From the IMG/VR virus record IMGVR_UViG_3300048438_000153, positions 211,103-275,102 of that record: a DNA stretch of 64,000 nt. One strand, given 5' to 3'. Shown here piece by piece: positions 2,930 through 51,416 of this stretch. Under the pieces are notes generated by a model. The model was not told the DNA's origin, ran no database searches, and saw nothing but the letters and a program-made list of their open reading frames with translations. The position numbers and the translations under genes were made by a program. Within the stretch, counting starts at the first letter, position 1. Every line of letters starts with the position of its first letter.

Positions 2930-2941
2930 ATAAAGACTCTA
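2930..2941 (-). promoter_or_regulatory. Putative late promoter TA-N5-TTTAT (TAGAGTCTTTAT)
   Basis: One of 8 exact copies at a conserved distance upstream of start codons. Confidence 0.6.
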
Positions 2942-3919
2942 TTAAGAAACCCCTATGACCGACCAATCAAAGTCCCCAACCATCCCATTCGCCGAATAAT
3001 CTGTGACAGTACCCTCAAAGAAATTCTTCATGGAGTCTCCTGAGATGATCCAATCGAGCCAAGAAAGAGGGTTTTCTTTCTGCTTAAAGATCGGCTTCAA
3101 ACCAAGCTGAAGCAGTCTACGATCTGCCAAGTACCTGACGTATGTCTTAATGTCCTGAGAGGTCAGCTCATTAATCGTGTCGTTTGATCCGTAGACGAGA
3201 TCGACAAGCGCGTCCTCAAGCCCTACCGCTTTCGTGTAGTTCGTGTAGATGTAACTCTTGAGCTCATCTGTCACTACTTGAGGGTTCTCAGTGCAGTATG
3301 TGTGAAAGAGCTTAGTCATACCCTCAACGTGTGTCGTCTCGTCACGGATAGACCATTCAACTACCTCACACATACCCTTCATCTTTCCGAATCTCTGAAA
3401 GTTGAGGAGCATCACGAAAGCAGAAAAGAGACTCATGCCCTCGTTACACACCGAGCGCGCCATCTCGAACGCCATGTGAGCTTCATCTGAAAGACCTTTT
3501 GGAGCTTCCATCATGAACTCGATCTTCTCTCTCATAGCATCAAACTCTAAGAAAGCTGAGTATTCTTTCTCTGCAAACCCGAGAGTGTCATTCAAGAGCG
3601 CATACGCCCTTTGATGAGTACCCTCGCGGTTGGCGAAAGAAAGAAGCATATTCCTCACTTCGTTATTCTTGAAGAAAGGAATAAAGACCTCACAGTAGTT
3701 ACCACCAACTGCGACATCACTTTGAGTGAAGATTCTCAAAATCTGAGTAATGTGTTCTTTCTCAGACTTTGAGATTTCACTGCCCTTCCACTGAGAGACA
3801 TCCTCTTGGAGCTTGGCTTCCCAAGTACCCCAATGGATCTTCTCATGGTCTTCCGCAAAGGTCATCGCCCATGCGTACTGAAAGGGCTTATAAGTCTTAC
3901 TGAACTCTGTAAGAGACAT
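2942..3919 (-). CDS. nrdB: Ribonucleotide reductase class Ia beta subunit
   Basis: YKPFQYAWA, FTQSDVAV, REGTHQRAY (radical Tyr), EGMSLFSAF, WSIRDETTH, NFFE..VTDY. Confidence 0.97.
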   Translation of the reverse strand: MSLTEFSKTYKPFQYAWAMTFAEDHEKIHWGTWEAKLQEDVSQWKGSEISKSEKEHITQILRIFTQSDVAVGGNYCEVFIPFFKNNEVRNMLLSFANREGTHQRAYALLNDTLGFAEKEYSAFLEFDAMREKIEFMMEAPKGLSDEAHMAFEMARSVCNEGMSLFSAFVMLLNFQRFGKMKGMCEVVEWSIRDETTHVEGMTKLFHTYCTENPQVVTDELKSYIYTNYTKAVGLEDALVDLVYGSNDTINELTSQDIKTYVRYLADRRLLQLGLKPIFKQKENPLSWLDWIISGDSMKNFFEGTVTDYSANGMVGDFDWSVIGVS

Positions 3920-3971
3920 ATTTTATGTCCTCCTGTGTTGAAAGGGATAGCATAGTACCCTCTCGGAGAAC

Positions 3972-3983
3972 ATAAAAGAGCTA
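3972..3983 (-). promoter_or_regulatory. Putative late promoter TA-N5-TTTAT (TAGCTCTTTTAT)
   Basis: 53 nt upstream of the nrdB start. Confidence 0.5.
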
Positions 3984-4004
3984 GTACCTGTTAAAGTACC
4001 GATC

Positions 4005-4838
4005 TTAGAGGTAATCCCTCCGATACCTACGCCTAGCGAGCTTAACTTCCTTGTACGGAGGCTTCCACTCAATCTCACCCTCTTCCATCAGCTTTTGAGC
4101 TCTCGGCACTTCATCAGGGTTAATGACAGGCATATCAACTCGGGCGGGCGCCCAGCCTGGTACTTGCTTGTTCATCGCGCGAACATTTGCACCCATCTGC
4201 TTGATGCCTTCGTTGACAGAACCGAAGCTCTTAATGAGAATGTCCTGAACCTTCTTTGGTGAGGTGAACTCGTTACCGTTGATAGCGAGGTTCTTGATCT
4301 CGTTCATCACATTCTGATCTGTGTAACGAGTGATGTCGCCCTTACCGGGATTCCCATTTCTCGTTGGGAAAAGACCCTTTGTGATGATGTTGAGAACCTT
4401 AAGAAGTGTCTTGCCCTCAAGGTCTGCGACATAACCCCCCACCTTGACATTAGGTCCGAAAGCGATGATGGCTGCTGACCATCTGTGGTGTCCGTCCATA
4501 ATCTGACCGTCATTAGAAATGATCGCACCAAGATCAGTAGTAAGCTTTCCATCAAGCATAGCGAGAGCCATACCCACAGACTTACCGAGAACCATTGTGG
4601 TCTGAGAAGGTTTGAGGTTGCTCGCTTGAGCCTTCGTCTTTCTCACAGAAATCTTATCGCTCTTGTTATCGCCTGAATCAACCAAGTGCTTAGCGAGATC
4701 GGCATCTACGTTTGAAAGACGACCAGCGTTCTGAATCTCTCTATACACCTCTTCAGGCGCTAAGACACGAGCGGTGCGCTCCATACGAGCGACTCTTATT
4801 TCTAAATCTCTAAGGACTTCTGATGCGGTTCTTCTCAT
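4005..4838 (-). CDS. ParB/Srx-like domain protein with an RRTAS...RVAR leader
   Basis: LKPSQ and IISNDGQIMDGHHRWSA match the ParB-N/sulfiredoxin-like motif. Confidence 0.7.
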   Translation of the reverse strand: MRRTASEVLRDLEIRVARMERTARVLAPEEVYREIQNAGRLSNVDADLAKHLVDSGDNKSDKISVRKTKAQASNLKPSQTTMVLGKSVGMALAMLDGKLTTDLGAIISNDGQIMDGHHRWSAAIIAFGPNVKVGGYVADLEGKTLLKVLNIITKGLFPTRNGNPGKGDITRYTDQNVMNEIKNLAINGNEFTSPKKVQDILIKSFGSVNEGIKQMGANVRAMNKQVPGWAPARVDMPVINPDEVPRAQKLMEEGEIEWKPPYKEVKLARRRYRRDYL

Positions 4839-4887
4839 TTTTTTCTCCTTACCATAGGTGTATCGAGAAGTTGGTTTACTGCCTACG

Positions 4888-4899
4888 ATAAAGAGATTA
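4888..4899 (-). promoter_or_regulatory. Putative late promoter TA-N5-TTTAT (TAATCTCTTTAT)
   Basis: 50 nt upstream of the start at 4838. Confidence 0.6.
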
Positions 4900-4907
4900 A
4901 GAAACTA

Positions 4908-6632: not shown

Positions 6633-6660
6633 CCGTCTCTCTCCATTAAGACTCTAAGTT

Positions 6661-6714
6661 AAAAAGCGACCCTAACCTCCTCCCTCGCAGTTGAGGGGGG
6701 AGAGGGTCAGGGTC
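6661..6714 (-). terminator. Intrinsic terminator-like hairpin between holA and nrdA
   Basis: Minus strand GACCCTGAC-CCTCTCCC...GGGAGGAG-GTTAGGGTC followed by GCTTTTT. Confidence 0.6.
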
Positions 6715-6747: not shown

Positions 6748-7683
6748 TTAAGAAACCATAAGACGGAGCAACCCCGTTTTGAACGCCGAAAACGGCGACA
6801 CAACTCCGCTAATTGCAAGGTTTTCGCAATGATAGAGGACACCTAAGATTTCTCTCAATTTTTTTGTAGTGAACCTACGCGCTCTAGGAACGAGCACATC
6901 ACCCACAAGCCAACTTTGAACGCCTATTTCTTCAGAGATACCTTGCACAGAAGTGACCCCTCTGTCGATACAAAGTCTTACCGATAAGAGCTGAACTATA
7001 TTCTTGTGAAGTAGACCCGCGACCAATCCCATCGTCGGGTCTTTGTCTCTGTTCTTCTCAAAGCGAGCGCAAGTTTTAAGAAAGTTAGTCGGATTCCATG
7101 AGATCACCGCATCAGTCAGAAGCACTCCATCCATTTCTTTCAAGGGCGCAATCACCGACAAGACCTCTATGGGAGTGACCTCACTCCCCTCAGCGACGTA
7201 GCCGATCTTCAGAGCCTCGTAGGTTAAGACTCCAACATCTTGACCTACTCGCTGAACCACACTCTCACAGATAGACAGACTGATCTGCTTCCCCTGATCC
7301 GCCACCATCTTCTGAAAGAACTTCGCATACCACTCCGCGAGCTTCTTCTTACTCTTAGGTATCTCGTAACAGTCTTTCTTTTTGACTCCCATGAGTGCTT
7401 TCGGCACTACGCGGTCTGCTAAATAGAGAACACCGAAGCCCTCTTTCTGAGGGATGTGTGCGAGGTTCTTTAACCCTGTCGGGTTCGAGATCACGATGAG
7501 CTTATCCACCACGTCAAAGAGTCCCAAATCAAAGGCTTCCTCGATCTCACTCTTAGAGGATTTCTTTCCATCTAGGTAGATCACCTCCCATCCGAGCGCA
7601 TAAGCATCGTTGATGATTTCTCTTGAAGCATGAAAGGCGAGGTCTTTGAACGTACCGTAGATGACTCTGTGTTCTTTCTTCAT
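6748..7683 (-). CDS. holA: DNA polymerase III delta subunit-like (clamp loader)
   Basis: LGLFDVVDKLIVI and VQRVGQDVGVLTYEALKI (delta-like); ~310 aa; adjacent to a delta'-like gene. Confidence 0.75.
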   Translation of the reverse strand: MKKEHRVIYGTFKDLAFHASREIINDAYALGWEVIYLDGKKSSKSEIEEAFDLGLFDVVDKLIVISNPTGLKNLAHIPQKEGFGVLYLADRVVPKALMGVKKKDCYEIPKSKKKLAEWYAKFFQKMVADQGKQISLSICESVVQRVGQDVGVLTYEALKIGYVAEGSEVTPIEVLSVIAPLKEMDGVLLTDAVISWNPTNFLKTCARFEKNRDKDPTMGLVAGLLHKNIVQLLSVRLCIDRGVTSVQGISEEIGVQSWLVGDVLVPRARRFTTKKLREILGVLYHCENLAISGVVSPFSAFKTGLLRLMVS

Positions 7684-8264
7684 TTGTGGACTCCTAGAAA
7701 GTATCCACTGAGGGCGGAGTGAGAAACCCTCTTCCTCGCTAAGAGTGACCTCAGCTCGTCTGTATACAAGTCGGTGTCCTCCTCTTTGATAAGGACTTCA
7801 AGATAGGCTTCCATAAATGCCCTCTCAGATCCCTTCTCCACCTTCGCAAGTACCTTGAGTCCTCTTAAGAGGTTATCTTCGCTCAGAGCGCCATACAGAG
7901 CCTCTGCGTCTTCATAGAGATCATGCTCCTGTCGGGGCGCGTAATGAAACTTCTCTCCACAGCGAGATCGGATAGTATTAGGAACGCCACCTAAGTCATT
8001 CGCCCATAGGAAAAGGGTTGGGCTGTTGGGCGTAGGCTCTTCGATGCGCTTAAGAAGAATATCAAGGGCTGACGGATCAGCCTCATCGAGTGGACCTGCT
8101 ACTAGACAGGGATTCTTATGGGGGTAAACCTGAGTGAAGAGGCTCATCAATAGCCTCACTCCGTCTACCTTCAGATTTGTGATCGGCTCATGAACAAGCT
8201 CATAGCCCTCTAGCTCTTCAGCGAGGCCGTTCTTAACGCCCCTTCCATGATGAATGAAAATCAT
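7680..8264 (-). CDS. holB: DNA polymerase III delta' subunit-like (short)
   Basis: ALDILLKRIEEP and PNTIRSRC motifs; likely start ATG 8264 after a GAGGAG RBS. Confidence 0.75.
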   Translation of the reverse strand: MIFIHHGRGVKNGLAEELEGYELVHEPITNLKVDGVRLLMSLFTQVYPHKNPCLVAGPLDEADPSALDILLKRIEEPTPNSPTLFLWANDLGGVPNTIRSRCGEKFHYAPRQEHDLYEDAEALYGALSEDNLLRGLKVLAKVEKGSERAFMEAYLEVLIKEEDTDLYTDELRSLLARKRVSHSALSGYFLGVHK

Positions 8265-8289
8265 GCTGTCTCCTCTCTTGTGACCCTTA

Positions 8290-8298
8290 CCTATATCA
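8290..8298 (-). promoter_or_regulatory. Putative extended -10 promoter (TGATATAGG) for holB-holA
   Basis: TGnTAT motif about 26 nt upstream of ATG 8264. Confidence 0.45.
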
Positions 8299-8384
8299 GA
8301 ACACCCATCAAGGTAAGAGATATCCATACAGGAGGTTATCTTAAGTTTCTGCTTGAACCTCGTCTCTGCCTCCGATATACAGGT

Positions 8385-10205: not shown

Positions 10206-13200
10206 TTACTCCTTGTCTTCAAACTCTGAGGCGGTCTGATAGTCGCCCTCGTCCATGAACTTCTCCCTGATGAGGGAGTTTCTTTCTACTGACTTAGCGA
10301 CCGAAAGCCAAGCTTCTTCAAGAATGACGTCGCTCTTTCTCATGAGGTCTGTCAGCGCGTCCCTCTCTCTCTCAGGGCTTAAGAGTTTACTGAAGCCCTT
10401 TGACTTGAGTTTGAGCTTCTCGATAGTGCCAACGTCAGTCATCGAGCGCACATTGTCGTTTGAGTAGTAGGCGATCTTAAACTCGTTAGAGTAGGTCGAA
10501 ATCGCCTCTAGTACGTCCTGTGCAGACCTTCTGCTCATGTAAGACTCCCAACATGAAGCGTCATCTACGTCGAAGGGCTCAGAGGGGCGCTTCAGGTAAT
10601 CTGAAAGACCCATCTCAAACTCGTTGCACTTCATCTTGAAATACACGTTGAGTACGCGCTGTGCTACGTCGCTATCGTTCAGAGAAAGAGACATCCTCTT
10701 GAGCGGAGTCCCATTCGCAGACCACCACCTCTGACCGATGAGCTCAGTCTTGTTATCGTCAGTACAGAGGAAGAGGTCAGACAAGCTAACCTCATTTCCG
10801 TTTCGGATGCGATCATTGTCTACGAGCCAATCTTTAATCGCGATCTCCTCCTTAGAAAGCACCTCATGATCAAGATCGAGGAAGTCAATCTGAATGTCTG
10901 AGCTGAAGCCGAGAGAAGGCAAGGTCATAAGGTCACTGCTGTCCATGTCGGCCTTGATAGAAGACACATTCTTATCTGCTCTCGCGCTCACAATCTGACC
11001 GAAGATGAGCCTCGAAGGAACGTCCGAAGGCAGACACTTAGAGAAAGAAAGAGCCTTATTGTAGATCGTCCTCGTCATGTCGAGATTTTCTTCAACGAAG
11101 ACCTCAAGGTTGATGTCCTCACTCTGAGAAAGAACATGACCCTCTTCAATGATCGCGAAGTCATCGTCTGACGTGAACTGATAAGAAACAATCGAAGAGA
11201 GCCCCGTGAGATCTGAGACTCTCCTAGCTTCAGAGGGGTCTTTTGATTCTTGAATTACAGAAGAGAACAGAGGATCTGACCTGAAGCGAGAGGGGTCGAG
11301 CGCGAGATACTTAAGTGGGTTCTCGTCCTCGTTCTCAAGGGCCTCTGAGACATCTTTGATGTTACTAGCAGAGGGGTCGAGGAGCATCGAGACAAGATTC
11401 TTATTGATCCTGATCGACTCACCTGTAGTCCTCTCAACGCTATCGTAGTCTGCGATCAGATCAGTCTCCATGCCCTTTCTGATGATGTCCATGAAGAAGT
11501 CCTGATCCGCGCCCTGAATCAAGTCTTTCATCTCATCAATGGTCATGTCCATAGCGTCTTTTCCAAAAGCAGATGCTTTGTCTGAGTCGCCATAGCCTGA
11601 AGTCCTATCGCCACCCTTAGCGATCACCGCGTCAAGGTAGATAACCTCTACTTGCTTGTTTTGACCTGTGCGGTATGCGCGCGCTGTCCTCTGCTTAACA
11701 AGCTCAGAGTCAAAACCCTCACCGCGATCAAGGTGAACCACCGTTCCGATGAACTGAAAGTTGAAGCCCTTCGCGTACTCGTCGGTGCAACTGATCGACT
11801 TGATGCTTGGGTTGTCTTTAAAGATCATCTTAGTAGCGGAAATAGCCCACTGCTCGGAAACGAAAGCGAAGACGCCATTAGGGTTGAAGTAAACTTTCTT
11901 AAGAGCGTTCCTTGAAGACTTGACCCTCTTCACATCCTTATCGGTGAGAGCCTTGAAGAGATCGTTGAAAGGAGTCTCAATAACCTCTTTCTCCTCTTCC
12001 TCAAGTACGCTGTCATACTTGTTGAGGTTGAACTCTACGAGCTCGAAAAGATCCTGAACCTCCTCCCTAAACTCTTCTCCCGCTTTTGGGTGAGCATTTA
12101 AGAAAGAATAGTCTACAAGCCTACGCTCAAGTGCAGATAAAGACGCGAACCTACGACTGTCAAGGTTGACCCTAGAAAGCTCAGTCTTCCCTGTGTCTTT
12201 CTTGATCGCGCCGATATTCTTACCCGCTCGATAGAACTCGATGGAGTCCCTACGGAGCGCGACGTGAACACCGCCAACGCCCGACTTACTGCACTTAACT
12301 GCGTTCTGTCTGACGATAGTCTGATCTGCTGAGAAATAACACACCGCCTTCCCCGGCCTGTCCATCAAGATTTTCTCAGCTTGATCGAGCTTCGGGTTAG
12401 GCACTTTCTCATTGAAATACTTTGAGGGGTTCGTGGTCAGGGTGATGAGATCCCTGATCTTGGAGACACTCTTAGCTTGAGCGAAGTCCACGATGTTCTT
12501 GAAAGAGGACTCCTGATACTTGCCCCCTTTCTTAATTACGTCTCTGTACTTCTTGACCATCGCCTTAAGCTCGCGAGCGAGTGCTCCTGAGAGCTTGCGG
12601 TACTCTTTCTCGACGCGCTCGTTGAGCCGAACTGTGATGACTTGTGAAGTGGGCTTCTGAAGCTTAGGGAGTCCGATTTCTTCAAGATTCACGTCCTGTT
12701 TGAAAGCGAAATAAGCGTTCGCCTTGACCCATGTGTTGAACTCTTCGCGAGTTCCTTTCTTAAGGCCGACGAATCGACCGCCGATGACGTTCCCGAATCT
12801 CTCAGCGAAAGCTCTTTCCTTCTCTGCTGAGAACTCCGCGCCCCTCGCGACTGCGACGAACCTGTAAAGGTCGAGTGGATCTCTCTCCATCGCAGAAGCT
12901 GTGAGAAGAATCTTACGAGGGTGCTTCAGGTCAGAGAGAGCCTTTCTCTTAGTTCCTGTGAGCGCCTCATTGACTTCATCAAAGAAACAGATCGCGTATT
13001 TGTCTTTGAAGTACTCAGTAGAGTCAGCGTAGTTGCTACCCATCTCAGGCTTAGAGGGGTCTTTCCAATAGTCTGAAGGGATATCCCTGAGCCTACGCTC
13101 CCTCTTCTTCGGGTCTTTCTCAGCGAGGAACTCCTCAACGCGGTCGATGCCTCTGACAATCTTAGCGAACTTGGTGTAGTTCATCTCGTAGATGCGGTTA

Positions 13201-15476: not shown

Positions 15477-15488
15477 ATAAAACTACTA
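15477..15488 (-). promoter_or_regulatory. Putative late promoter TA-N5-TTTAT (TAGTAGTTTTAT)
   Basis: 58 nt upstream of the start at 15419. Confidence 0.55.
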
Positions 15489-21418: not shown

Positions 21419-21430
21419 ATAAACACTCTA
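21419..21430 (-). promoter_or_regulatory. Putative late promoter TA-N5-TTTAT (TAGAGTGTTTAT)
   Basis: 50 nt upstream of the tail fibre start. Confidence 0.6.
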
Positions 21431-26938: not shown

Positions 26939-26984
26939 CTTTATATGTCTCTCTTCTTTCTCCAAGAGACATATAAAGACTTAA
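26939..26984 (-). promoter_or_regulatory. 14-bp perfect hairpin overlapping a near-consensus late promoter and the RBS of the fibre gene
   Basis: CTTTATATGTCTCT (26939-26952) / AGAGACATATAAAG (26965-26978); TTAAGTCTTTAT at 26973-26984. Confidence 0.7.
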
Positions 26985-27783: not shown

Positions 27784-27795
27784 ATAAATAAACTA
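27784..27795 (-). promoter_or_regulatory. Putative late promoter TA-N5-TTTAT (TAGTTTATTTAT)
   Basis: 45 nt upstream of ATG 27739. Confidence 0.55.
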
Positions 27796-28257: not shown

Positions 28258-28506
28258 TCAGCACTCCTCTACAAAGTAACCTTTGCTCTTGAGATAAGCC
28301 ATTAAAGAGACAATCTTATAGGGGTCATTTGACGTGACTACGAGCTTGTTCTCTTTGAGCGAACACTCCCACTCCTCTTTCTCTTTAAGGGTTCTAAGAA
28401 ACCTCTCAGAGAACTCTCCATACTGAGGGTGGACGGTCACAGAGTATTCTTTCTTAATAATTCTCTCTAACCACTTATCTGCTACTTTCTTGCTGATAAT
28501 GCTCAC
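28258..28506 (-). CDS. Hypothetical protein (MSIISKKVADKWL leader)
   Basis: GTG start overlapping the upstream TGA (GTGA); the longer track ORF is an overlap extension. Confidence 0.6.
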   Translation of the reverse strand: MSIISKKVADKWLERIIKKEYSVTVHPQYGEFSERFLRTLKEKEEWECSLKENKLVVTSNDPYKIVSLMAYLKSKGYFVEEC

Positions 28507-29072
28507 AGAAGAACTCGCCTTACTTCCTGACCCCCCCCTGTCTTTCTTAGGAGGGTGAGGTTTGAGTTGACTGTGCTTAGAGCTAGGTGGATCTCTTTCA
28601 AGTCCTCGATCTTTTCTAGTGCGCTGAGACATCTTAGAAACCTATACCTTACTTTCCCTTGAGACTCTCCGATTTCCCTAGCCGCATGGCTTTGACTAGA
28701 GTAGAGATAAAGAAGTATCATTACTCTTATATCCTTCTTATCAGAAAAGTACCGAGAAAGATTATCTTGTAAGTATGCTTCTGTGAAGACAGGTATCGTG
28801 AGCAATACTCTGAGTCTATCCATAGCCCGATTCACACGATAGTGTATGTTCGGCTGAGTGTACCCGAATATCTTACCGAGAGATGATTGAGGCACACCTT
28901 TCAAGACGTGAAGCTCGATCATATCAGCCTCCACAGGGCTAATCCGACCCATGTGGTCGAGGACACACTCAAGCCTCTCTAAAGTCTCCTCGCTTGATTC
29001 TTCTGAGTACGTTGGGAAGTTCGACATTGAGTGCTCATTAGAGAAGATTCTCTCCATGATGTGGCTATCCAT
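28503..29072 (-). CDS. Sigma-70 region-4-like tandem HTH protein (candidate phage sigma factor or regulator)
   Basis: ISPVEADMIELHVLKGVPQSSLGKIFGYTQPNIHYRVNRAMDRLR and a second HTH SQSHAAREIGESQGKVRYR. Confidence 0.65.
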   Translation of the reverse strand: MDSHIMERIFSNEHSMSNFPTYSEESSEETLERLECVLDHMGRISPVEADMIELHVLKGVPQSSLGKIFGYTQPNIHYRVNRAMDRLRVLLTIPVFTEAYLQDNLSRYFSDKKDIRVMILLYLYSSQSHAAREIGESQGKVRYRFLRCLSALEKIEDLKEIHLALSTVNSNLTLLRKTGGGQEVRRVLL

Positions 29073-29601
29073 TAGAATCTCCTACTGAGAAAGAATCCAC
29101 TGTGAGAATCACTTCCGCGCTCCTCAGAGTGATCAATATCGAGTACCGTCCACCCTCAAACTCGCTTTCTTTTTCCAAGATATCGAGGACAATCCCTACG
29201 CACCCTTTAAAGTCACCCCCCGTGATTTCAACCTCATCCCCCAATCGGTAGTTCCCACCACGACTGTAAGCCTCAGAGATCATCTTTCTTAAGTCGGACT
29301 CGCTTATCGTTCCTTGAGATATCATGTCGCTTCGGGTGTCGTATTGACTGATCATGCTGTCTATGTAAACAGACCTCGCTAAGTCATAATACTTAGCTGA
29401 GGGATAGCCAGACTTGACGAAGATATACCCTTCTATAAGAAAGGTCGCTTTTGAAGAACCTCCTCTTAAGATCGGTATGTAGATGTCTTCAAGGCTTACC
29501 TCAGCTAAGTCTTTCAGCCGTTGCGCTAAAAGTCCTAGCTTAGCTTCTTCCTCCCCCTTCGGCGATGTTTGCATCACCACCCAAGTCGATCTCTTTCTCA
29601 T
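29065..29601 (-). CDS. nusG: NusG/RfaH-family transcription elongation factor
   Basis: NGN (WVVM...IYIP...LIEGYIFV) and KOW (GDEVEITGGDFKGCVGIV). Confidence 0.85.
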   Translation of the reverse strand: MRKRSTWVVMQTSPKGEEEAKLGLLAQRLKDLAEVSLEDIYIPILRGGSSKATFLIEGYIFVKSGYPSAKYYDLARSVYIDSMISQYDTRSDMISQGTISESDLRKMISEAYSRGGNYRLGDEVEITGGDFKGCVGIVLDILEKESEFEGGRYSILITLRSAEVILTVDSFSVGDSNG

Positions 29602-30850
29602 CTACACTCCCTCTGTAAGAGTTTGATCTCTCTATTATTCTCTTTACCCATTTCGAGAATAACATCAATGAAACTTCCTCTTCTTTCTCGCTAGTTTCTT
29701 TATCCGAAGGTGCGTTTTTTGCGTTTTCGGGGGCTGTGTCCAAAGAAGCGACCGCAGACTCTTCCGTAGAAGGGGCGACCGCCTCTATCTTAACTCCCCT
29801 AAATCGAAGCCACTTCAAGAGTTCACACTTGAACAGCGCCTCTGTAGAACGGCGCGGTTTTGAAGAGATTGCTTCTGCTAAGAAAATGAGCTTGTCTCCA
29901 TTCTTCTCCCAAGCCTGAGAAAGAACATCTTTGTTCCAATAAGGAGGAGGGTTGCCCACGCCCATACCCAAGCTGATCGCAAGCATCGTGGCTGATAAGA
30001 GCCTGTCGAAAGCCACCCCCACAGGAGTGCTCGAAAGAACCTCATCGGATATTCTTAGAGCTTCTTTTTCATCGCTCACCAAGAGCTTGCAGATGAGGTC
30101 ATTCCTGTCTACATGAAGATAAGAGCGAACCGCCTCTAGTGACACACTCTTAGAGTTCGATGAAGCAACTCCCTCAACTCCCTTGAGCGCGTCTCGGATG
30201 TGACCCTCAGTGAAGTCTGCGATGAGTATGAGAGCTTCTCTTTCGTATGAGAAACCCTCCTGATCACAGACCACAGCAAGCCTACTTGCGATCTCTTCAG
30301 AATCGACATGGTGGATGATAAAGGCGGGAGCGCATCGAGAAAGAACTGTGGCTCTCATCTTCTCGGGCTCTGTAGTACAGAAGATGCAAACGAGCCTCTT
30401 CTCTTCAGACCCTTTGCGATTGTCCTCCATAGGCTTTAAGAGAGCGTCGAGGGCGCTAGGGGAGAGCTGATGCGACTCGTCAAAGAGGTAGAGCTTACGC
30501 CTACCTGAGAAAGCACTGTAGTCCAACTCTTCGAGGATTTTCTTAACGTCAGCTTTACCGCTGTTGGTGGCTGCGTCCACTTCGACAAAAGCGTCACTCC
30601 CTCCCTCAAGCATACCCTTGCAAGATGAACACTCGTCACAGGGGTTTCCCTCGCTTGGGTTCTCACATAAAAGAGCGCGAGCTAGGATTCTCCCTAGCGT
30701 CGTTTTCCCTGATCCGAACGGGCCTGCGAACAGGTAAGACTGCTTCCACCCCGCTCCTTCCGAGACGATTCCTCTTAAGGTCTTGACCGCACCTGATTGA
30801 CCCAACACATCTTCATAGGTGCGAGGTCTATACTTTGTATCTAAGCTCAT
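29540..30850 (-). CDS. dnaX: DNA polymerase III gamma/tau clamp-loader ATPase
   Basis: KYRPRTYEDVLGQ, GPFGSGKTT, C...PCDECSSC zinc module, DESH, TVLSRC, GHIRDAL. Confidence 0.95.
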   Translation of the reverse strand: MSLDTKYRPRTYEDVLGQSGAVKTLRGIVSEGAGWKQSYLFAGPFGSGKTTLGRILARALLCENPSEGNPCDECSSCKGMLEGGSDAFVEVDAATNSGKADVKKILEELDYSAFSGRRKLYLFDESHQLSPSALDALLKPMEDNRKGSEEKRLVCIFCTTEPEKMRATVLSRCAPAFIIHHVDSEEIASRLAVVCDQEGFSYEREALILIADFTEGHIRDALKGVEGVASSNSKSVSLEAVRSYLHVDRNDLICKLLVSDEKEALRISDEVLSSTPVGVAFDRLLSATMLAISLGMGVGNPPPYWNKDVLSQAWEKNGDKLIFLAEAISSKPRRSTEALFKCELLKWLRFRGVKIEAVAPSTEESAVASLDTAPENAKNAPSDKETSEKEEEVSLMLFSKWVKRIIERSNSYRGSVDEKEIDLGGDANIAEGGGRS

Positions 30851-31910: not shown

Positions 31911-31922
31911 ATAAACGAGGTA
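31911..31922 (-). promoter_or_regulatory. Putative late promoter TA-N5-TTTAT (TACCTCGTTTAT)
   Basis: 37 nt upstream of the start at 31874. Confidence 0.5.
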
Positions 31923-37283: not shown

Positions 37284-37934
37284 ATGATACTTGGATTAGA
37301 CCCCTCTCTCCGAAACTTCGGATGGGTTCTCATGGAAGATGACGGCATCTTCTTAGACAAAGGAATGATGTCTACAGAAGCGAGCATGGTCTTCGTTGAG
37401 AGGTATGTCTTTCTCAGAGAAGGTCTGCGAGAAGTCGTTCAGAAAGTACGAGCAGATCACCCTGATAAGACGCTCAGAGTAGGTATCGAGTCACCCATCT
37501 TCAACGACCTTTACTCTGAGGGTATGTACGGACTCTTTCTCTACTCTAACGAAGCTCTCATGCTAGAGAAGTGTGACACGGTGTACTTGTCGCCCAATCA
37601 AGTCAAAGCTCACGCCGCTTCTTTCTTAAATCGACCGAAAGGGTGGAAGATGCAGAAAGGAGACATGGTGGACGCGGTTAAGGAAGCCACTGAGGGTCAG
37701 GGCGCGAAGAGGTGGAATCACCACCAAGCAGACGCTTATTGGGTCGGGCGCACTGCGGGTCGGTTTTGGCAACTGACCGAGGGTACGATCACCCGAGATG
37801 ATCTCTCAGACTTAGAGCGTAGGCAATTCACTGATTATGAGAAATATGTGCGCGGAAAGAAGGCGGGCAAGACCAAAAGGAAAGGCATAACCTACAAGGA
37901 AAACGACAGATATTTCCGTTGGTCTGAAGATTAA
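37284..37934 (+). CDS. ruvC: RuvC-like Holliday junction resolvase
   Basis: MILGLDPSLRNFG, GIESP, PNQVK, ADAY; AAGGAG RBS before ATG 37284. Confidence 0.8.
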   Translation: MILGLDPSLRNFGWVLMEDDGIFLDKGMMSTEASMVFVERYVFLREGLREVVQKVRADHPDKTLRVGIESPIFNDLYSEGMYGLFLYSNEALMLEKCDTVYLSPNQVKAHAASFLNRPKGWKMQKGDMVDAVKEATEGQGAKRWNHHQADAYWVGRTAGRFWQLTEGTITRDDLSDLERRQFTDYEKYVRGKKAGKTKRKGITYKENDRYFRWSED

Positions 37935-37965
37935 GTTTTTTATTCGGTGTGCGCCCTCACGACTC

Positions 37966-38017: not shown

Positions 38018-39181
38018 ATGGCTAAAGGAAAGAGAAAGACAGATTTAATGGCGGCGGCAAAAGTCGTAGCAGGCGTTTTGAAAGAGGATCATGTTGTTTC
38101 TCTCGACCCAAACAGTCTTAAAGAAAGCAGACCTCACGTTTCAACAGGGTCAGTAGCTCTCGATTATCTCATCGGGGGGAAAGAGAACGAACATGGAGTG
38201 CGCCCATGTCCAGGAATACCGAAAGGAAATATCACAAACCTTTACGGCTTGGCGGGTGCGGGAAAGACTACAATCGCGCTTCAGACTGCCGCTCAGGTGT
38301 GCGCGGAGGGCGGTACTTGTGTTTATATTGATTGGGAGCACGAAGTTGACCATAGATACGCCTCAGTCTTAGGTGTTCCTGTTTCTGACCCCTCCAAGTT
38401 TCTCCTGATTCAGCCTGATACTCTTGAGGCGGGACTGCGCTACATCTTTACCATGACTGATGCGGGAGTAGACCTCATCGTCATCGACTCTGTGGGCGCG
38501 GCTGTTCCGAAAGCCGTCTTTGAAAAGAATGACGATGGCCCTACGCCCGTAGGTCTTAACGCTCGTCTTTGGAGCACCTACCTCCCTAAGATCAAGAGTA
38601 AGATCAAATCCTCTGAGACTGCAATAATAGGCATTTCTCAGCTCCGTGAGTCCATCGGGGGAATGTCCTTCGCAGGCCCTAAGAAGATCCCTCAAGGTGG
38701 TAAGGCTTGGACGTTCTACTCGACCCTTCAGATTATGCTTCGCGTAGTCGGAAAAGAGAAAGGAAAACAGTGGGACGGTATGCAAGGAAAGGTCGTGGAA
38801 ACCGTACTCGGTACTGCGGTGAGGGCGAAGCTCGACAAGTGCAAGGTTTCTGACTCGGCGCACAAGGAAGTTGATTTCTATCTGATGTCGGGAGAAGGTG
38901 TCGATAACGTCCGTACTGTCCTTGAGCTTGGCGTTAAGACAGGCGTGGTAAGCAAGAAGGGATCTTGGTTCTCTTGGACGGGGAGTGAGGGTGAGGTTCG
39001 AGGTCAAGGTCTTAACTCTTTCAAGGATATGCTCACCGACGATCACGTCTCTCAGATTTTCGCTCAAGTTAAGCCGTTCCTCGCTGACCCGAAGAAAGCG
39101 AAGAGCGAAGAAGCGCCGAGCCTTGAGGATCTCGCAAATCTCGGAGGCGATGAGGATGACGATCTTCTAGGGGATTTGTGA
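38018..39181 (+). CDS. recA: RecA recombinase
   Basis: STGSVALD, GLAGAGKTT, YIDWEH, QPD, VIDSV, ISQLRE, GGKA..FY, KKGSWFS. Confidence 0.95.
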   Translation: MAKGKRKTDLMAAAKVVAGVLKEDHVVSLDPNSLKESRPHVSTGSVALDYLIGGKENEHGVRPCPGIPKGNITNLYGLAGAGKTTIALQTAAQVCAEGGTCVYIDWEHEVDHRYASVLGVPVSDPSKFLLIQPDTLEAGLRYIFTMTDAGVDLIVIDSVGAAVPKAVFEKNDDGPTPVGLNARLWSTYLPKIKSKIKSSETAIIGISQLRESIGGMSFAGPKKIPQGGKAWTFYSTLQIMLRVVGKEKGKQWDGMQGKVVETVLGTAVRAKLDKCKVSDSAHKEVDFYLMSGEGVDNVRTVLELGVKTGVVSKKGSWFSWTGSEGEVRGQGLNSFKDMLTDDHVSQIFAQVKPFLADPKKAKSEEAPSLEDLANLGGDEDDDLLGDL

Positions 39182-47666: not shown

Positions 47667-47702
47667 AGAGCTTAAGAAAAGCTCCTGTCAGAGACAATGA
47701 TC

Positions 47703-50700
47703 TCAGTAGAGGCTGAGCGCCTCGTCGATCTCTGCGTCAGTCATATCGTCATCCTCGATGGTGACATCCTCTGAAAGAATCTCAAGGGCTGTCGCGAGCT
47801 TCGTTGAACCCGTCTTAGAGCCACAATCAAGACCCATCTTCCCGATGAACTCTGAAGGCTCAAGCTCCTCTCCCTTTTCATTCTGCTCGTAAGAAAGAAC
47901 CGTGACGCTCTTCATACCGCGAGTGACTGCGACGTAGGCGAGCTTCTGCTCTTGTTCTGCTTTATCAGCCTGAGCCTGAGCTTCGTTAGCGTGGATGATA
48001 GGGTCGAAATCCACTTTGTCTGAGGGGAACTTGCCTTCGATCATCGGGACGTAAAGGTTCGGAACTTCAAGACCCTTCCAACCGTGAACGGTGTCGAGGA
48101 CAACAGCATCCTCATCGCTCTTGGCGAACCCTCTCTTAGCCTTGCTCTTCATGACCTTAATCTTATCAAGAGCTTCTTGGACGCTCTCATGCTTATTGAA
48201 GAGAGATCGCAGAGAAGGGAGAGGAGCAAGGTTGTACTCTTCAGGGTCGCCTTGACTGTCGCCTTCAGATTCGACGCTCGGCTCAATTTCACCGCCTCCG
48301 TCAGAAACCATCTTGCTAAGGTACTCCGTGTCAGAAGCCTTCACCTTTGAAGCGAGGATTTCATGGAGTTTCTTTCCATTAGGTCCTTCTACATAGAAGT
48401 CTTCGTCTCCCTCATAGATGGGCTTATATCCGAGAGCGATGTCGAAAGCCTCTTTAGGTCTAGCCGTACCCTCACCACCCCAATGAGCAAGCATCTCCAA
48501 ATACTTAAAAATCTCGTTCTTCTTCTTATCTTTAGAATCAATGCCAAGAGCTTCTAAAAGGGTGTAGAAGTTATCTTCTTGACCCTCGTCAACTTGATCC
48601 ATGATATGATCAGGCAGATCTTCAACTTTTACTTTAAAAGAGTCAGCCACTTTTCCGAGCGTCTTTCCGTTGAAAGAGCTTGGGAAGTCGTACCCGAAAT
48701 CTCTCCATGAGTTGAAGAGAGCACTCATTCTGAGAGAAACGTCTGAGCTTGACGCGCCCATTACTCTGATGATTGACTTTGTAGAGGTGTGGTTGAAGGG
48801 ATCTACGCCTGATACGAAAGGGATGTCTTGCTCAAGTAAAGCGAGGGCGTATGGGATGACCTCAGCGTTGGTTCGGCAAGCGATACCGAAATCGCTAGGT
48901 GTGCTCGTCTGAACACTACTAGTGATAGCTGTCTTAATGTCTGAAGCGAGGCTACGAGCAGACTCATTCGCGTTCTTCTTTCTTTCGTGCTTAATAGAGT
49001 CTTGACTACCCTTGAAAGAAGCGACGCAAGAAAGCCCTAGACCCTTACTCGCGAGTCGGTTGGCTGCGCTGACAATGTTCTCACCTGAGCGGAAGTTAAG
49101 CCCGATAGACATAAGATCGAAAGAGCCTTGATTAGTCTTAGACTTACTCGTGAACTCTTGTGAGGTCGCGCCTCGGAAGCCGTAGATACTCTGATTCTCA
49201 TCGCCGATGAGAGTGAAGCTCGTACCCTGAGTCGCTACAGGGGCTTTCACAGGAACAGGCTTAGAGTTAGAACCCTTAGCTGAGTATGTTCCCGCAATCA
49301 TGCCGAAGAAAGCGTGCTGGACAAGGTTCAAGTCTTGAGCTTCGTCAACAATGATGTGCTTGTATTGAGCGCGGATCTCATCAAGGTTTTTCTTATAAGA
49401 AAGAAGCCTCGTAGCTTTGATCAGAACATCGTCGAAGTCCATTCGGTCGTCAATGTTTAAGAGATGCTGATAAGCACCATAGACTCTCGCTTGCATCTCA
49501 AAGAGATCACCCTTACCTGAGACTTTTACCCAAGCCTCAGAAGGGGATAGCATACGCGCCTTACATTTAGTAATGAAGAGCTGACATTTCTTAGCTGAAG
49601 GGATCTTAATCTCAGCCCCTTGACTTCCCATCCCCATGATGCCCCACCAAGCAGACTCAGTAGATGCTTTCTTTCCTTTCTTCTCCACTGCACTAGGGAA
49701 AGAATAAGAGTCGATTTTCTCTTGGTTTCCGCCGAAAGCTCTCGCCAAGATTTTCTCGCCTCTCGACGTTTTCAAGATAGAGTCAATGAGGCTGACGTTC
49801 TCGGTAGTTACGCTCCCTACTCCGTTTTTCTTATAGCTCTCTCTAATACCCAAGACGACAGAAGACACGTTTTCTTTCTCGTATCCTTTCTCCTCACGCC
49901 AATTCTCAACGGTGTAGATCATAGAAAGAACACGGATGTCGTCTCTTTCTGCACTCGCACTCATTGGAGTCATCTTCTCAGACCAAAAGCTATCACTCTT
50001 AGGTCTTGAGCCTGAATTGGGCGTGTCTTTCGCGAGCTTAACTGCTCTCTGTACGAAAGAAAGAAGATCGTACTCATCAACTATTTTCTTAACTCCCGCA
50101 GAAGGGTCAAAGCGGTTGATAAACTCAATCGCAATTGAGTGAGTGGTGCGCCCAATCGTAGTGTACTCAATGTTCTTGAGTGATCTACCTACGGCGTCCT
50201 CGATCTTTTTCTTAAGGTCACTAGCAGACTTCCTAGAGAAAGAACAAGCAAGGATAGAGTAAGGGTCTGCTCCCTTGTCTTTGATGAGGTGAGCTACCTT
50301 ACCTGAGAGAACACGGGTCTTACCTGATCCCGCGCCCGCAGAAATGATAGTCATCCCGTCAGAAAGCATCGCGTCCTCTTGCTCTCTCGTAAGACCTAGA
50401 TCGCCACCGATATCAGTTTTATGCTCAGCGTCTGTGACGAGAACCTTAGCCTCATTCAAGACCTTGATAACCTCTACGATAGAGCTATCTAGATTGCCCT
50501 CAGTCTGCGCCTCTTCGATAAGGTTGTTCTGCTCTCTAAGAATCTCGGGGAGAGAAGCTCCGCTTTCCCTATTCTCTTTGAGAGACTTAAGTAGACCCCG
50601 AACCTCGGCAGATTCGCTCGCAGTCTTCGCAGGAGAGCCATACGCTTCGGCTACTTTCTGCATGGACTTGATTAAGGCTTTAGACCTTCCATCGGGAGGA

Positions 50701-51353
50701 GTCTTAGTGCTGACGTTAACGATATCTGTTAAAGTTGGCGCATCGGTCAATGAGCGAAGCTCTTTCACCCTAGCGTTGTCGAAAACGTCTTTGACCTCTT
50801 GAAGATCAGTGTTTTTAATCTTATTGAGCGTCACATGAGTTGCCCTCGCAGCGTATGCGATTTCTCTCACATTGTTCAGATTTCCTCTGACGGTCTTGAG
50901 GAGGCGACTGATCTGTGTTCTCGCGCTGTTGTTACTAATGGCGCTGATGAGGTCTCTTTGAACATCGAAAAACACGTTGTGCTGTACGTCGAGCTTCTTA
51001 ATGCTATCTTGAAGATCAGAAACCGCCTCAGAAAGAGATGGGTCAGGGTTGTTGTGTGAAGCAACAATCGCATCGTAGTAAACTTTAAGAGACTTGACGA
51101 TAAGCACCATTCTCTTCTGCTGATTCTGATCAACTTTGGTAGGCTTGGGCATACTCTTGAGAGATTTGATCTGAGCCTTGTTCAGACCAACCTCTAATCT
51201 AAGAGTGTTTTCGCCTGTGACACCTTTCTCAAGGAGAGCGTATGCCGACTCGATTGAGTCAATCATGCGGTATTCAATGGCATCTTCGATCAACCTAATG
51301 GCGGTTATGTAGTTTTCGCGGTTCGTAGCCGCTTCTTTCTTAAGATTGGACAT
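47703..51353 (-). CDS. UvrD/PcrA-like SF1A helicase with a ~310-aa N-terminal extension
   Basis: SAGAGSGKT, TTHS, VDEAQD, IGDENQSIYGFRGA, NFRS, RTN, TVHGWKGLE, AYVAVTRG. Confidence 0.92.
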   Translation of the reverse strand: MSNLKKEAATNRENYITAIRLIEDAIEYRMIDSIESAYALLEKGVTGENTLRLEVGLNKAQIKSLKSMPKPTKVDQNQQKRMVLIVKSLKVYYDAIVASHNNPDPSLSEAVSDLQDSIKKLDVQHNVFFDVQRDLISAISNNSARTQISRLLKTVRGNLNNVREIAYAARATHVTLNKIKNTDLQEVKDVFDNARVKELRSLTDAPTLTDIVNVSTKTPPDGRSKALIKSMQKVAEAYGSPAKTASESAEVRGLLKSLKENRESGASLPEILREQNNLIEEAQTEGNLDSSIVEVIKVLNEAKVLVTDAEHKTDIGGDLGLTREQEDAMLSDGMTIISAGAGSGKTRVLSGKVAHLIKDKGADPYSILACSFSRKSASDLKKKIEDAVGRSLKNIEYTTIGRTTHSIAIEFINRFDPSAGVKKIVDEYDLLSFVQRAVKLAKDTPNSGSRPKSDSFWSEKMTPMSASAERDDIRVLSMIYTVENWREEKGYEKENVSSVVLGIRESYKKNGVGSVTTENVSLIDSILKTSRGEKILARAFGGNQEKIDSYSFPSAVEKKGKKASTESAWWGIMGMGSQGAEIKIPSAKKCQLFITKCKARMLSPSEAWVKVSGKGDLFEMQARVYGAYQHLLNIDDRMDFDDVLIKATRLLSYKKNLDEIRAQYKHIIVDEAQDLNLVQHAFFGMIAGTYSAKGSNSKPVPVKAPVATQGTSFTLIGDENQSIYGFRGATSQEFTSKSKTNQGSFDLMSIGLNFRSGENIVSAANRLASKGLGLSCVASFKGSQDSIKHERKKNANESARSLASDIKTAITSSVQTSTPSDFGIACRTNAEVIPYALALLEQDIPFVSGVDPFNHTSTKSIIRVMGASSSDVSLRMSALFNSWRDFGYDFPSSFNGKTLGKVADSFKVKVEDLPDHIMDQVDEGQEDNFYTLLEALGIDSKDKKKNEIFKYLEMLAHWGGEGTARPKEAFDIALGYKPIYEGDEDFYVEGPNGKKLHEILASKVKASDTEYLSKMVSDGGGEIEPSVESEGDSQGDPEEYNLAPLPSLRSLFNKHESVQEALDKIKVMKSKAKRGFAKSDEDAVVLDTVHGWKGLEVPNLYVPMIEGKFPSDKVDFDPIIHANEAQAQADKAEQEQKLAYVAVTRGMKSVTVLSYEQNEKGEELEPSEFIGKMGLDCGSKTGSTKLATALEILSEDVTIEDDDMTDAEIDEALSLY

Positions 51354-51404
51354 ACAGCGCCCCTCGCTTTCTTATTTCAAGATAGGTTCTATTCAACCAA
51401 CTCC

Positions 51405-51416
51405 ATAAAGAGACTA
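51405..51416 (-). promoter_or_regulatory. Putative late promoter TA-N5-TTTAT (TAGTCTCTTTAT)
   Basis: 52 nt upstream of the UvrD-like start. Confidence 0.6.

What the first reader, a model, noticed from the sequence alone, without database searches (positions are those of the whole stretch)
2930..51416. Putative phage late promoter TA-N5-TTTAT at a fixed distance from nine genes
Seen: exact copies at 2930, 3972, 4888, 15477, 21419, 27784, 31911 and 51405 (all minus strand), plus a one-mismatch copy at 26973, lie 37-58 nt upstream of the likely start codons. A weaker copy sits at 53639 (+). A 7-base pattern also occurs by chance, so the evidence is the positional consistency in short intergenic gaps. 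No shared -35 box is apparent, as with T4 gp55 late promoters (established: TATAAATA, activated by the sliding clamp). Inference: it is read by a phage sigma factor, possibly 28503-29072 with the NusG paralogue, and perhaps clamp-coupled since the phage encodes its own beta clamp and loader.
Basis: partly seen in the sequence, partly recalled or inferred. Interest (0 to 1): 0.65.

Follow-up and report, generated by a model that had tools for sequence, protein, structure and literature searches.

The report
Conserved promoter motif of marine jumbo phages
A short DNA word (TAG, four bases, TTTAT) sits about 25-60 bases in front of some 45 genes of a 275-kb uncultured marine phage and of its distant relatives, and is most likely the phage's own promoter for capsid, tail and some DNA-metabolism genes, read with the help of an unusual phage protein pair rather than an ordinary sigma factor.

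Summary
The window is the last 64 kb of a 275,102-bp IMG/VR phage contig from seawater. Exact TA-N5-TTTAT occurs 67 times on both strands; 32 copies lie 25-65 nt upstream of a start codon on the gene's strand. Dinucleotide shuffles give 0.98 (maximum 5); permuted motifs give 1-6.

The full element is about 16 bp: y-R-R-T-A-R-N4-Y-Y-T-A-T. It recurs at the same position in relatives of 41-64% GC, as CGGTAG-N4-YCTAT in the GC-rich ones, and heads the capsid operon in five genomes. It is absent from a complete 298-kb phage of another lineage.

Leaders as short as 25 nt that already contain the ribosome-binding site put the motif at about -20 to -8, like a -10-region promoter without a -35 box.

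"Late" is plausible, not shown. The motif heads capsid and tail-fibre-like genes, but also RNR, helicases and DnaX. Core replication genes carry a different motif, TTCTGATAT.

The proposed "sigma factor" has two sigma-region-4-type HTH domains and no sigma-2 domain. It is always paired with a true NusG paralogue. No phage RNA polymerase and no beta clamp was found. The reader protein remains an inference; no start-site data exist.

The parts
2930..2941 (-). Motif A copy TAGAGTCTTTAT, 48 nt before the ATG at 2881 of an unknown 372-aa gene (1763-2881)
   Evidence: highest PWM score in the genome
3972..3983 (-). Motif A copy TAGCTCTTTTAT, 52 nt before the ribonucleotide reductase small-subunit gene (2942-3919)
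4888..4899 (-). Motif A copy TAATCTCTTTAT, 49 nt before a 277-aa gene (4005-4838, phrog_2859, function unknown)
15477..15488 (-). Motif A copy TAGTAGTTTTAT, 57 nt before a 1737-aa SNF2-related gene (10206-15419). The intergenic region is divergent, with only 14 nt between the motif and the neighbour's start.
21419..21430 (-). Motif A copy TAGAGTGTTTAT, 49 nt before a 1804-aa gene with an Mtd_N (tropism determinant) N-terminus (15955-21369). It directly follows the stop codon of the upstream gene.
26973..26984 (-). One-mismatch copy TTAAGTCTTTAT, 43 nt before the ATG at 26929 of a giant unknown gene (21431-26929)
27784..27795 (-). Motif A copy TAGTTTATTTAT, 44 nt before a 167-aa gene (27236-27739). 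The same 12 bases stand before the orthologue in L093.
31911..31922 (-). Motif A copy TACCTCGTTTAT, 36 nt before the operon of the 325-aa gene, DnaX, NusG-like and tandem-sigma4. The orthologous site in L093 is TATCTCGTTTAT.
51405..51416 (-). Motif A copy TAGTCTCTTTAT, 51 nt before a 1216-aa helicase gene (47703-51353), in a divergent intergenic region
53615..53626 (+). Variant TAACCTTTCTAT, 41 nt before the SAM-lyase-like gene 53668-54321.
37932..37943 (+). Exact copy TAAGTTTTTTAT, 74 nt before RecA (38018-39181). A class C site (CTGATAT, 37965) lies between it and the gene.
28503..29072 (-). 189-aa protein with two HTH domains. Residues 20-94 resemble sigma region 4 of ECF sigmas; residues 95-176 resemble RpoS region 4 and LuxR/NarL HTH domains. 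No sigma-2 domain. Candidate reader of the motif.
29065..29601 (-). 178-aa NusG paralogue (NGN + KOW). Its stop overlaps the start of the tandem-sigma4 gene by 8 nt. The pair is conserved in all relatives examined.
29540..30850 (-). DnaX-type clamp-loader ATPase, first conserved member of the DnaX / NusG-like / tandem-sigma4 block

Best explanation
Motif A is the core promoter of the phage's largest recognisable transcription class.

Shown:
- It is a strand-specific element of about 16 bp, y-R-R-T-A-(G/A)-N4-Y-Y-T-A-T. In this phage it reads ttRR-TAG-N4-TTTAT-(c/a)-T.
- It lies 25-65 nt before about 45 start codons. Fifteen exact copies are in divergent intergenic regions.
- It keeps its place in related phages of very different GC content, including in front of the capsid operon.

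Inferred from geometry:
- Leaders of 25-33 nt already contain the Shine-Dalgarno sequence, so transcription must start within about 15 nt of the TAT.
- TAT therefore acts like a -10 element and TAG sits near -20. There is no -35 element.

Inferred from gene content:
- No phage RNA polymerase was found, so the host core enzyme is used and redirected by a phage factor.
- The best candidate is the conserved, translationally coupled pair of a NusG paralogue and a 189-aa protein made of two sigma-region-4-type HTH domains. Their two nearly invariant recognition helices could read the two conserved half-sites, TAR and YTAT, about 9 bp apart.
- Class A probably corresponds to late expression (capsid, tail-fibre-like and many unknown genes), with some nucleotide-metabolism genes included. 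A TTCTGATAT class serves replication genes. A 45-nt repeat serves small genes at the contig ends.
For: Position:
- 32 copies at -25..-65 against 0.98 in shuffles. Permuted and re-spaced controls give 1-6.
- The distance peaks at 40-49 nt.

Promoter rather than leader element:
- 15 of 35 genes with an exact copy have a divergent neighbour. For 8 of these genes the motif is within 14 nt of, or inside, the neighbour's coding region, so no room is left for another promoter in the gap.
- Nothing is conserved upstream of -4.
- Motifs A, B and C occupy the same distance range and are almost mutually exclusive: 42 A, 13 C, 8 B and 2 A+C among 153 gaps of 40 nt or more.
- Sigma-70-type sites are not enriched: 13 against 18.3 expected. 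TTGACA and TATAAT are not enriched upstream of genes.

-10-like geometry: five sites in G007 leave 25 nt to the ATG with AGGAG starting 16 nt after the motif. G003 has sites at 26 nt and G000 at 33 nt.

Conservation (copies at -25..-65 out of all exact copies in the genome):
- G002: 14 of 27. G003: 13 of 41.
- G007 (64% GC): 15 sites of CGGTAG-N4-YCTAT.
- L093-L096 carry copies before orthologous genes.
- The capsid operon is preceded by the motif in G000, L096, G003, G005 and G007.
- G009, a complete phage of another lineage without the factor genes, is at control level: 2 of 57.

Factor:
- More than 80 homologues of 47-93% identity on contigs up to 375 kb.
- The block DnaX / NusG-like / tandem-sigma4 is conserved.
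- Recognition helices QPxxxYR and QGxVRxR are invariant.
- Structure: domain 1 matches sigma region 4 at Z 7.4-8.4, rmsd 1.3-2.8 over about 60-70 residues.

No phage polymerase: no Pfam RNAP beta or T7-type match, no DFDGD motif, and no family match in six giant ORFs.

Gene classes: capsid and Mtd_N under A. DNA polymerase A, RecA, RecD2-like and SNF2 helicases, delta' under C.
Against: - No transcription start site has been seen. The only RNA data are assembled metatranscriptome contigs, which cannot show ends.
- A protein made only of sigma-4-type domains has no known way to melt DNA, so a sigma-2-like partner (host or phage) is still needed and was not found.
- Co-occurrence of motif and factor follows phylogeny, so it is not independent evidence.
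- One relative that carries the factor (L097, 35% GC) showed no motif in 20 kb. G005 shows only a few copies.
- 88 of 153 intergenic gaps of 40 nt or more carry none of the three motifs.
- My gene calls are a crude ORF-plus-SD heuristic.
- The 'late' label is contradicted in part by RNR, helicase, PhoH and DnaX genes under motif A.
Confidence: 0.6

Rival explanations
1. The motif is not a promoter. It is an ops-like loading or pause site in the transcribed leader. The phage NusG paralogue would recognise it in the non-template strand of elongating host polymerase and make transcription of phage operons termination-resistant, as RfaH does at ops.
For: - A true NusG paralogue (NGN + KOW) is conserved in the lineage.
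- In the GC-rich relative the 5' half is CGGTAG in 10 of 14 sites. This equals positions 3-8 of the RfaH ops element GGCGGTAG (PMC5995543).
- Like ops, the motif is strand-specific and lies in 5' regions.
- Nine of 20 co-directional copies abut or overlap the upstream stop codon, so read-through transcripts would cross them.
Against: - For 8 of the 15 genes in divergent regions the gap leaves no room for a promoter upstream of the motif, and nothing is conserved there.
- The C3:G8 pairing needed for the ops hairpin shows no covariation: 58 pairable against 58.3 expected. The commonest form in G003 is CAATAA.
- Three consecutive genes each have their own copy (2930, 3972, 4888), which is unnecessary for a processive antiterminator.
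- The motif is an alternative to motifs B and C at the same distance, not an addition to them.
Confidence: 0.12
2. The motif is a promoter read by a host sigma factor (primary or alternative) without any phage-encoded specificity factor. The tandem-HTH protein does something else.
For: - No sigma-2 domain and no polymerase is encoded, so a host sigma must at least do the melting.
- The host is unknown, so its promoter consensus cannot be compared.
Against: - The element is kept in phages of 41-64% GC, which probably infect different hosts.
- It does not resemble TTGACA/TATAAT or an extended -10.
- The lineage keeps a dedicated regulator pair whose recognition helices are invariant.
Confidence: 0.15
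3. The motif acts at the RNA level, as a processing site, stability element or translational operator in 5' leaders of transcripts made from other promoters.
For: - Fixed distance to start codons.
- The U-rich UUUAU word resembles endonuclease-preferred sites (general knowledge only).
- Copies lie between co-directional genes.
Against: - The divergent regions leave no space for upstream promoters.
- GC-rich relatives keep only discrete bases (TAG, YCTAT), as expected of protein-DNA recognition.
- No associated structure or covariation was found.
Confidence: 0.05

Closest known systems
Phage T4 late promoters (TATAAATA, read by gp55 with gp33 and the gp45 clamp; PMC7892883, PMC6024815)
   Same: - A compact AT-rich element in the -10 region with no -35 box.
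- Present in many copies directly before capsid and tail genes.
- Host polymerase is redirected by small phage proteins. One of them (gp33) takes the place of sigma region 4 on the beta flap.
   Different: - The word differs: TATAAATA occurs 4 times in the genome, once in position. The element here extends to about -20.
- No sigma-2-like gp55 counterpart was found.
- The candidate factor is DNA-binding sigma-4-like, whereas gp33 does not bind DNA by itself.
- No clamp gene was found.
Phage T4 middle promoters and sigma appropriation (MotA box plus AsiA; PMC2988021)
   Same: - A phage DNA-binding protein supplies the upstream promoter contact that sigma region 4 normally makes.
- A small partner gene follows the regulator here (an ~82-aa ORF conserved after the tandem-sigma4 gene).
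   Different: - The MotA box lies at about -30 and works with a normal sigma-70 -10 element. Here the upstream half-site is only about 9 bp from the TAT.
- No sequence similarity to MotA or AsiA was detected or tested.
Minimal single-HTH sigma factors of jumbo phages without their own polymerase (Iyer et al. 2021, PMC7824862)
   Same: - Jumbo phage without an RNA polymerase.
- A phage protein consisting of the promoter-binding and flap-binding HTH of sigma.
   Different: - Two HTH domains in tandem, always next to a NusG paralogue.
- This is a different phage group: HK97 capsid of the PF25209 type, bacterial-type clamp loader, family A polymerase.
RfaH and the ops element (PMC5995543)
   Same: - A NusG paralogue is encoded.
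- GC-rich relatives have CGGTAG, the ops core, as the 5' half of the motif.
- Strand-specific and upstream of genes.
   Different: - About 45 copies rather than a handful.
- No support for the ops hairpin pairing.
- The position argues for initiation rather than elongation.

Membership tests
T4-type late transcription system | Promoter word TATAAATA at -10 | tested here: not met
   TATAAATA occurs 4 times in 275 kb, once at 25-60 nt upstream of a start. The conserved word is TAR-N4-YYTAT.
T4-type late transcription system | No -35 element | tested here: met
   No conserved position upstream of -4 relative to the motif in 38 aligned sites.
T4-type late transcription system | gp55-like sigma-2 domain specificity factor | tested here: inconclusive
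   No Sigma70_r2 match in six frames of the genome. No gp55-specific model was run, and most proteins have no family match.
T4-type late transcription system | Phage sliding clamp that activates the promoter | tested here: inconclusive
   No DNA_pol3_beta N- or C-domain match. A clamp loader is present. A divergent clamp cannot be excluded, and coupling is not testable here.
Sigma-70 family sigma factor (for 28503-29072) | Region 4 HTH | tested here: met
   Pfam Sigma70_r4 E 3.7e-5, just under the cut-off. In the model, residues 20-94 match region 4 of SigW, BldN, SigK and SigL at Z 7.9-8.4.
Sigma-70 family sigma factor (for 28503-29072) | Region 2 (core binding, -10 recognition, melting) | tested here: not met
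   No region 2 match. The second domain is another HTH of RpoS-region-4 / LuxR-NarL type, Z 5.5-6.0.
NusG/Spt5 family (for 29065-29601) | NGN domain followed by a KOW domain | tested here: met
   KOW E 1.3e-4 and NusG NGN E 8.8e-3, both under the cut-offs. The model matches full-length NusG at Z 9.2 and 9.0 over 143-144 residues, the NGN alone at Z 7.2-7.3, and the KOW at Z 8-9. Model pLDDT is only 69.
RfaH-type ops element | GGTAG core with the C3:G8 pair that closes the non-template hairpin | tested here: not met
   CGGTAG in 10 of 14 sites of G007 only. Across four genomes, pairable -3/+3 combinations number 58 against 58.3 expected.
RfaH-type ops element | Lies in the transcribed leader, downstream of a separate promoter | not testable with these tools
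   No start-site data. Indirect evidence is against it: for 8 of 15 genes in divergent regions there is no room.
Sigma-70 / extended -10 promoter | TTGACA-N17-TATAAT or TGnTATAAT | tested here: not met
   Sigma-70-type sites: 13 against 18.3 expected, none in the gaps concerned. TTGACA and TATAAT are not enriched upstream.

The most novel reading that the evidence does not exclude
The NusG paralogue and the tandem-sigma4 protein together replace sigma. The NGN domain would sit on the beta' clamp helices, the site sigma-2 uses, and read the ops-like 5' half (yRR-TAG) in the opened non-template strand. A sigma-4-type domain would hold the beta flap and the duplex. Host core polymerase would then initiate at the 16-bp element without any sigma-2 domain. 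That would make an elongation-factor fold an initiation factor.
Probability: 0.1. Interest if true: 0.9.

Novelty: new variant of a known kind. Interest (0 to 1): 0.55.

Why it matters
Promoters of uncultured jumbo phages are almost unknown. A motif that is this clear and this conserved does three things:
- It lets transcription units and temporal classes be predicted for a whole lineage of abundant marine phages. The phage's DNA was found in seawater runs from 18 studies.
- It gives a concrete 16-bp target and two small candidate proteins that can be tested in vitro without the host.
- The candidate reader has two sigma-4-type domains, no sigma-2, and is welded to a NusG paralogue. This does not fit any described way of redirecting bacterial RNA polymerase, so a positive test would add a new mechanism.

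Tried and rejected
- Near-identity DNA search against deposited phages: no match.
- Protein search with the helicase found only distant helicases.
- PHROGs on 30 genes behind motif A: 26 without any family, so functional classing had to rest on a few genes.
- Pfam on six giant ORFs and on the capsid-region genes: almost nothing.
- PWM iteration drifted to TTTCT words that are antisense coding sequence, and was abandoned.
- A downstream -10-like element: only a weak T-A-R signal 14-16 nt after the motif. Too weak and too inconsistent to call; short leaders exclude the motif being a -35 element.
- Alignment of the orthologous region upstream of the 325-aa gene was uninformative beyond the closest relative.
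- Complex prediction of the tandem-sigma4 protein with the E. coli beta flap (residues 820-950): no verdict, score 0.01. This is no evidence either way.
Run X20 holds identical short contigs inside two genes, but contigs give no ends.
- Hairpin covariation for an ops-like structure: none.
- The large representative protein search was not used. No alternative genetic code was needed.
Full report
**Context.** The window is bases 211,103-275,102 of a single 275,102-bp IMG/VR virus contig. The contig is linear, with a CheckV completeness of 88%. GC content is 47.5%. Genes use strong AGGAG-type ribosome-binding sites. Near-identical DNA is found in seawater and marine metagenome runs from 18 studies. 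There is no close relative among deposited phages. I called 276 genes with a simple longest-ORF plus SD heuristic. About 7% of the genome is intergenic.

**The observation.**
- The window has 11 exact TA-N5-TTTAT matches against 4.6 expected.
- Genome-wide there are 67 matches on both strands. Of these, 32 lie 25-65 nt upstream of a start codon on the gene's strand.
- 500 dinucleotide-preserving shuffles of the upstream regions give 0.98 ± 0.98, with a maximum of 5.
- Words with the same letters in another order, or with N4 or N6 spacing, give 1-5. The reverse complement gives 6.
- The distance from motif end to start codon peaks at 40-49 nt.
- Of 153 intergenic gaps of 40 nt or more, 44 carry the motif or a close variant (TTCTAT, TTGAT).

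**Anatomy.** Alignment of the sites extends the motif to t-t-R-R-T-A-G-n-n-n-y-T-T-T-A-T-(c/a)-T. Nothing is conserved further upstream, so there is no -35 box. The R-R before TA is often the upstream gene's stop codon. In 9 of 20 co-directional cases the upstream ORF ends exactly at, or in the first three bases of, the motif. This reflects tight packing, and the stop codons that the motif itself supplies. A weak T-A-R signal 14-16 nt downstream is too inconsistent to be a -10 element.

**Why a promoter, and where it sits.**
- Fifteen of the 35 genes with an exact copy have a divergent neighbour. For eight of these genes the motif's 5' end is within 14 nt of, or inside, the neighbouring gene. 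A separate upstream promoter would therefore have to lie in that gene's coding sequence.
- Two other upstream motifs occupy the same distance range and are nearly exclusive with motif A. This is how alternative promoter classes behave.
- Sigma-70-type sites are not enriched.
- In relatives the motif can be as close as 25-27 nt to the ATG, with the AGGAG starting about 16 nt after the TAT. In this phage the shortest reliable leaders are 33 nt.
- Transcription must therefore begin within roughly 15 nt of the TAT. That places TAT near -10 and TAG near -20. This excludes a -35-type role.

**Relatives.**
- The 189-aa protein at 28503-29072 has more than 80 homologues of 47-93% identity, many on contigs of 240-375 kb.
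- The gene order DnaX / NusG-like / this protein / a small ORF is conserved.
- Loci around these homologues show the motif before orthologous genes.
- Four larger IMG/VR relatives were fetched whole. At -25..-65, G002 (protein 51% identical) has 14 of its 27 exact copies and G003 (41%) has 13 of 41.
- G007 (34%, 64% GC) has no exact copies, but 15 sites reading cGG-TAG-N4-YCTAT at 25-70 nt. G005 (61% GC) has a few of the same kind.
- G009 is a complete 298-kb phage that shares only one unrelated gene and has none of the lineage's marker genes. It is at control level, 2 of 57.
- The lineage-wide consensus is y-R-R-T-A-R-N4-Y-Y-T-A-T.
- The gene pair ending in the HK97 major capsid protein is preceded by the motif and a structured leader of about 100 nt in G000 and L096. 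A copy also stands 730-812 nt before the capsid gene in G003, G005 and G007.
- One relative with the factor (L097, 35% GC) showed no motif in the 20 kb available.

**Which genes.**
- Motif A heads the capsid operon and the Mtd_N-type 1804-aa gene. It also heads two further giant genes, one of them SNF2-related, and many genes without any family match (26 of 30 in PHROGs).
- It also heads RNR small subunit, a 1216-aa helicase, PhoH, a gamma-glutamyl cyclotransferase, and the operon that contains DnaX, the NusG paralogue and the 189-aa protein.
- A second motif, TTCTGATAT(a/g), stands before DNA polymerase A, an SNF2 helicase, a RecD2-like helicase, RecA, Pol III delta' and a GIY-YIG gene. The word TCTGATAT occurs 18 times in the genome, 10 of them in position.
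- A third element is a ~45-nt repeat, present in nine copies only near the two contig ends, before small ORFs.
- This looks like an early, replication and late/structural programme, so 'late' is a fair guess for motif A. It is not shown, and the class is not purely structural.

**Who reads it.**
- No phage RNA polymerase was found. There is no Pfam RNAP beta or T7-type match, no DFDGD-type catalytic motif in called proteins, and no family match in the giant ORFs.
- The 189-aa protein is not a full sigma factor. The AlphaFold model (pLDDT 82) has two helix-turn-helix domains. Domain 1 matches region 4 of ECF sigmas (Z 7.4-8.4). Domain 2 matches RpoS region 4 and LuxR/NarL-type domains (Z 5.5-6.0). 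There is no region 2, and none anywhere in the genome.
- Its two recognition helices are invariant in pattern (QPxxxYR and QGxVRxR) across the lineage. The clade with PTVCYR/GxVRHR uses mostly YCTAT, while the clade with PNIHYR/GKVRYR uses TTTAT. G003 shows this even though its GC content is lower than that of this phage. This hints at co-variation but is confounded by descent.
- The neighbouring 178-aa protein is a genuine NusG paralogue. NGN plus KOW match full-length NusG at Z 9.2 and 9.0.
- The two genes overlap by 8 nt and travel together in all relatives.
- That this pair reads the motif is an inference from conservation, co-occurrence and domain type.
- A complex prediction with the E. 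coli beta flap gave no verdict.

**The ops lead.** In GC-rich relatives the 5' half is CGGTAG. This is the core of the RfaH ops element, which RfaH reads as a small hairpin in the non-template strand (PMC5995543). I therefore tested the pairing that closes that hairpin. Across 111 sites in four genomes, pairable combinations are at expectation (58 against 58.3). The commonest form in G003 cannot pair. Together with the divergent-region argument, this keeps the ops-like reading as a minority rival. It also inspires the most novel reading: that the NGN domain takes the place of sigma region 2 at initiation.

**Clamp coupling.** The phage encodes Pol III delta-like (6748-7683), delta' (7680-8327) and DnaX (29540-30850). 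No beta-clamp family match exists in six frames. The 325-aa gene beside DnaX has a consensus that, from memory, resembles the start of right-handed beta-helix proteins rather than a clamp. There is no evidence for or against clamp-activated transcription.

**RNA data.** One seawater metatranscriptome holds identical contigs at window 2502-2652, 2755-2905 and 4124-4545. Assembled contigs cannot show starts or strands, and DNA carry-over is not excluded, so this says nothing about the promoter.

**Verdict.** The element is very probably a lineage-specific -10-region promoter without a -35 box. The 'sigma factor' is an unusual two-HTH protein tied to a NusG paralogue, and its role is unproven. 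'Late' and 'clamp-coupled' are, respectively, plausible and unsupported.

Noticed in passing
window 55715-55740, 58702-58727, 62285-62310, 63033-63058 (all minus); G000 5753, 6342, 8238, 8681, 24194: A ~45-nt repeat, gTTGA-GGTATTGGTGAGGTAnCAGGnTTGGG-taactaagagtaa, in nine copies. It contains TGAGGTA twice, 11 nt apart. It occurs only near the two contig ends, before small ORFs. Candidate early-class promoter or operator array.
   Followed up: partly
window 1744, 8293, 33399 (minus); 37965, 43449, 45969 (plus); about 10 more in G000: A second upstream motif, TTCTGATAT(a/g), 28-53 nt before DNA polymerase A, RecA, RecD2-like and SNF2 helicases, Pol III delta' and a GIY-YIG gene. TCTGATAT occurs 18 times in the genome, 10 of them in position. 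Probably the replication-gene promoter class.
   Followed up: partly
G000 182994-183872 (L010:16194-17072, minus) and homologues in L096, G003, G005, G007: The HK97-fold major capsid protein is 80-96% identical between phages whose DnaX is 42-64% identical, whose tandem-sigma4 protein is 34-50% identical, and whose GC content ranges from 41 to 64%. The capsid protein is unusually frozen.
   Followed up: no
G000 184498-184620 (L010), and L096:4585-4709: The capsid operon has a leader of about 100 nt between motif A and the start codon, with two conserved hairpin-like stretches (ggggggttgggtttcccgcccc; ctctcttgaaaacagagag).
   Followed up: no
window 6748-7683, 7680-8327, 29540-30850: A complete bacterial-type clamp loader (delta-like, delta', DnaX) is encoded, but no beta clamp is detectable by Pfam anywhere in the contig.
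   Followed up: partly
window 30897-31874: This is the 325-aa protein next to DnaX. Its family consensus begins ...DFxTIQEAIDFLPxTGGxIVVYEGTY..., which from memory resembles right-handed beta-helix (pectate-lyase-like) proteins. If so it is structural, not a clamp. It was not folded.
   Followed up: no
G000 193473-196607 (L011:8873-12007, minus): A 1044-aa ORF carries an intein splicing domain with a LAGLIDADG endonuclease. The host protein of the intein was not identified.
   Followed up: no
window 33379-33405 (minus) and L093:5657-5690, L094:5365-5398: Upstream of the amidase gene, a motif-A/C-like word is followed after 6 nt by a conserved GGTATAAATA or GGTATAAAAG. GGTATAAA occurs 8 times in the genome, mostly intergenic. 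Possibly a fourth promoter type.
   Followed up: no
window 15955-21369: The opposite strand of the 1804-aa Mtd_N gene shows two similar series of ORFs of about 90-150 aa (17219-18547 and 19106-20653). This suggests a large internal duplication in the gene. Not examined.
   Followed up: no
window 28258-28500 and L094:10564-10812, L095:10567-10818, L096:10564-10815: A small ORF of 82-90 aa always follows the tandem-sigma4 gene, overlapping its stop codon. No family match. It could be a partner or an anti-factor.
   Followed up: no
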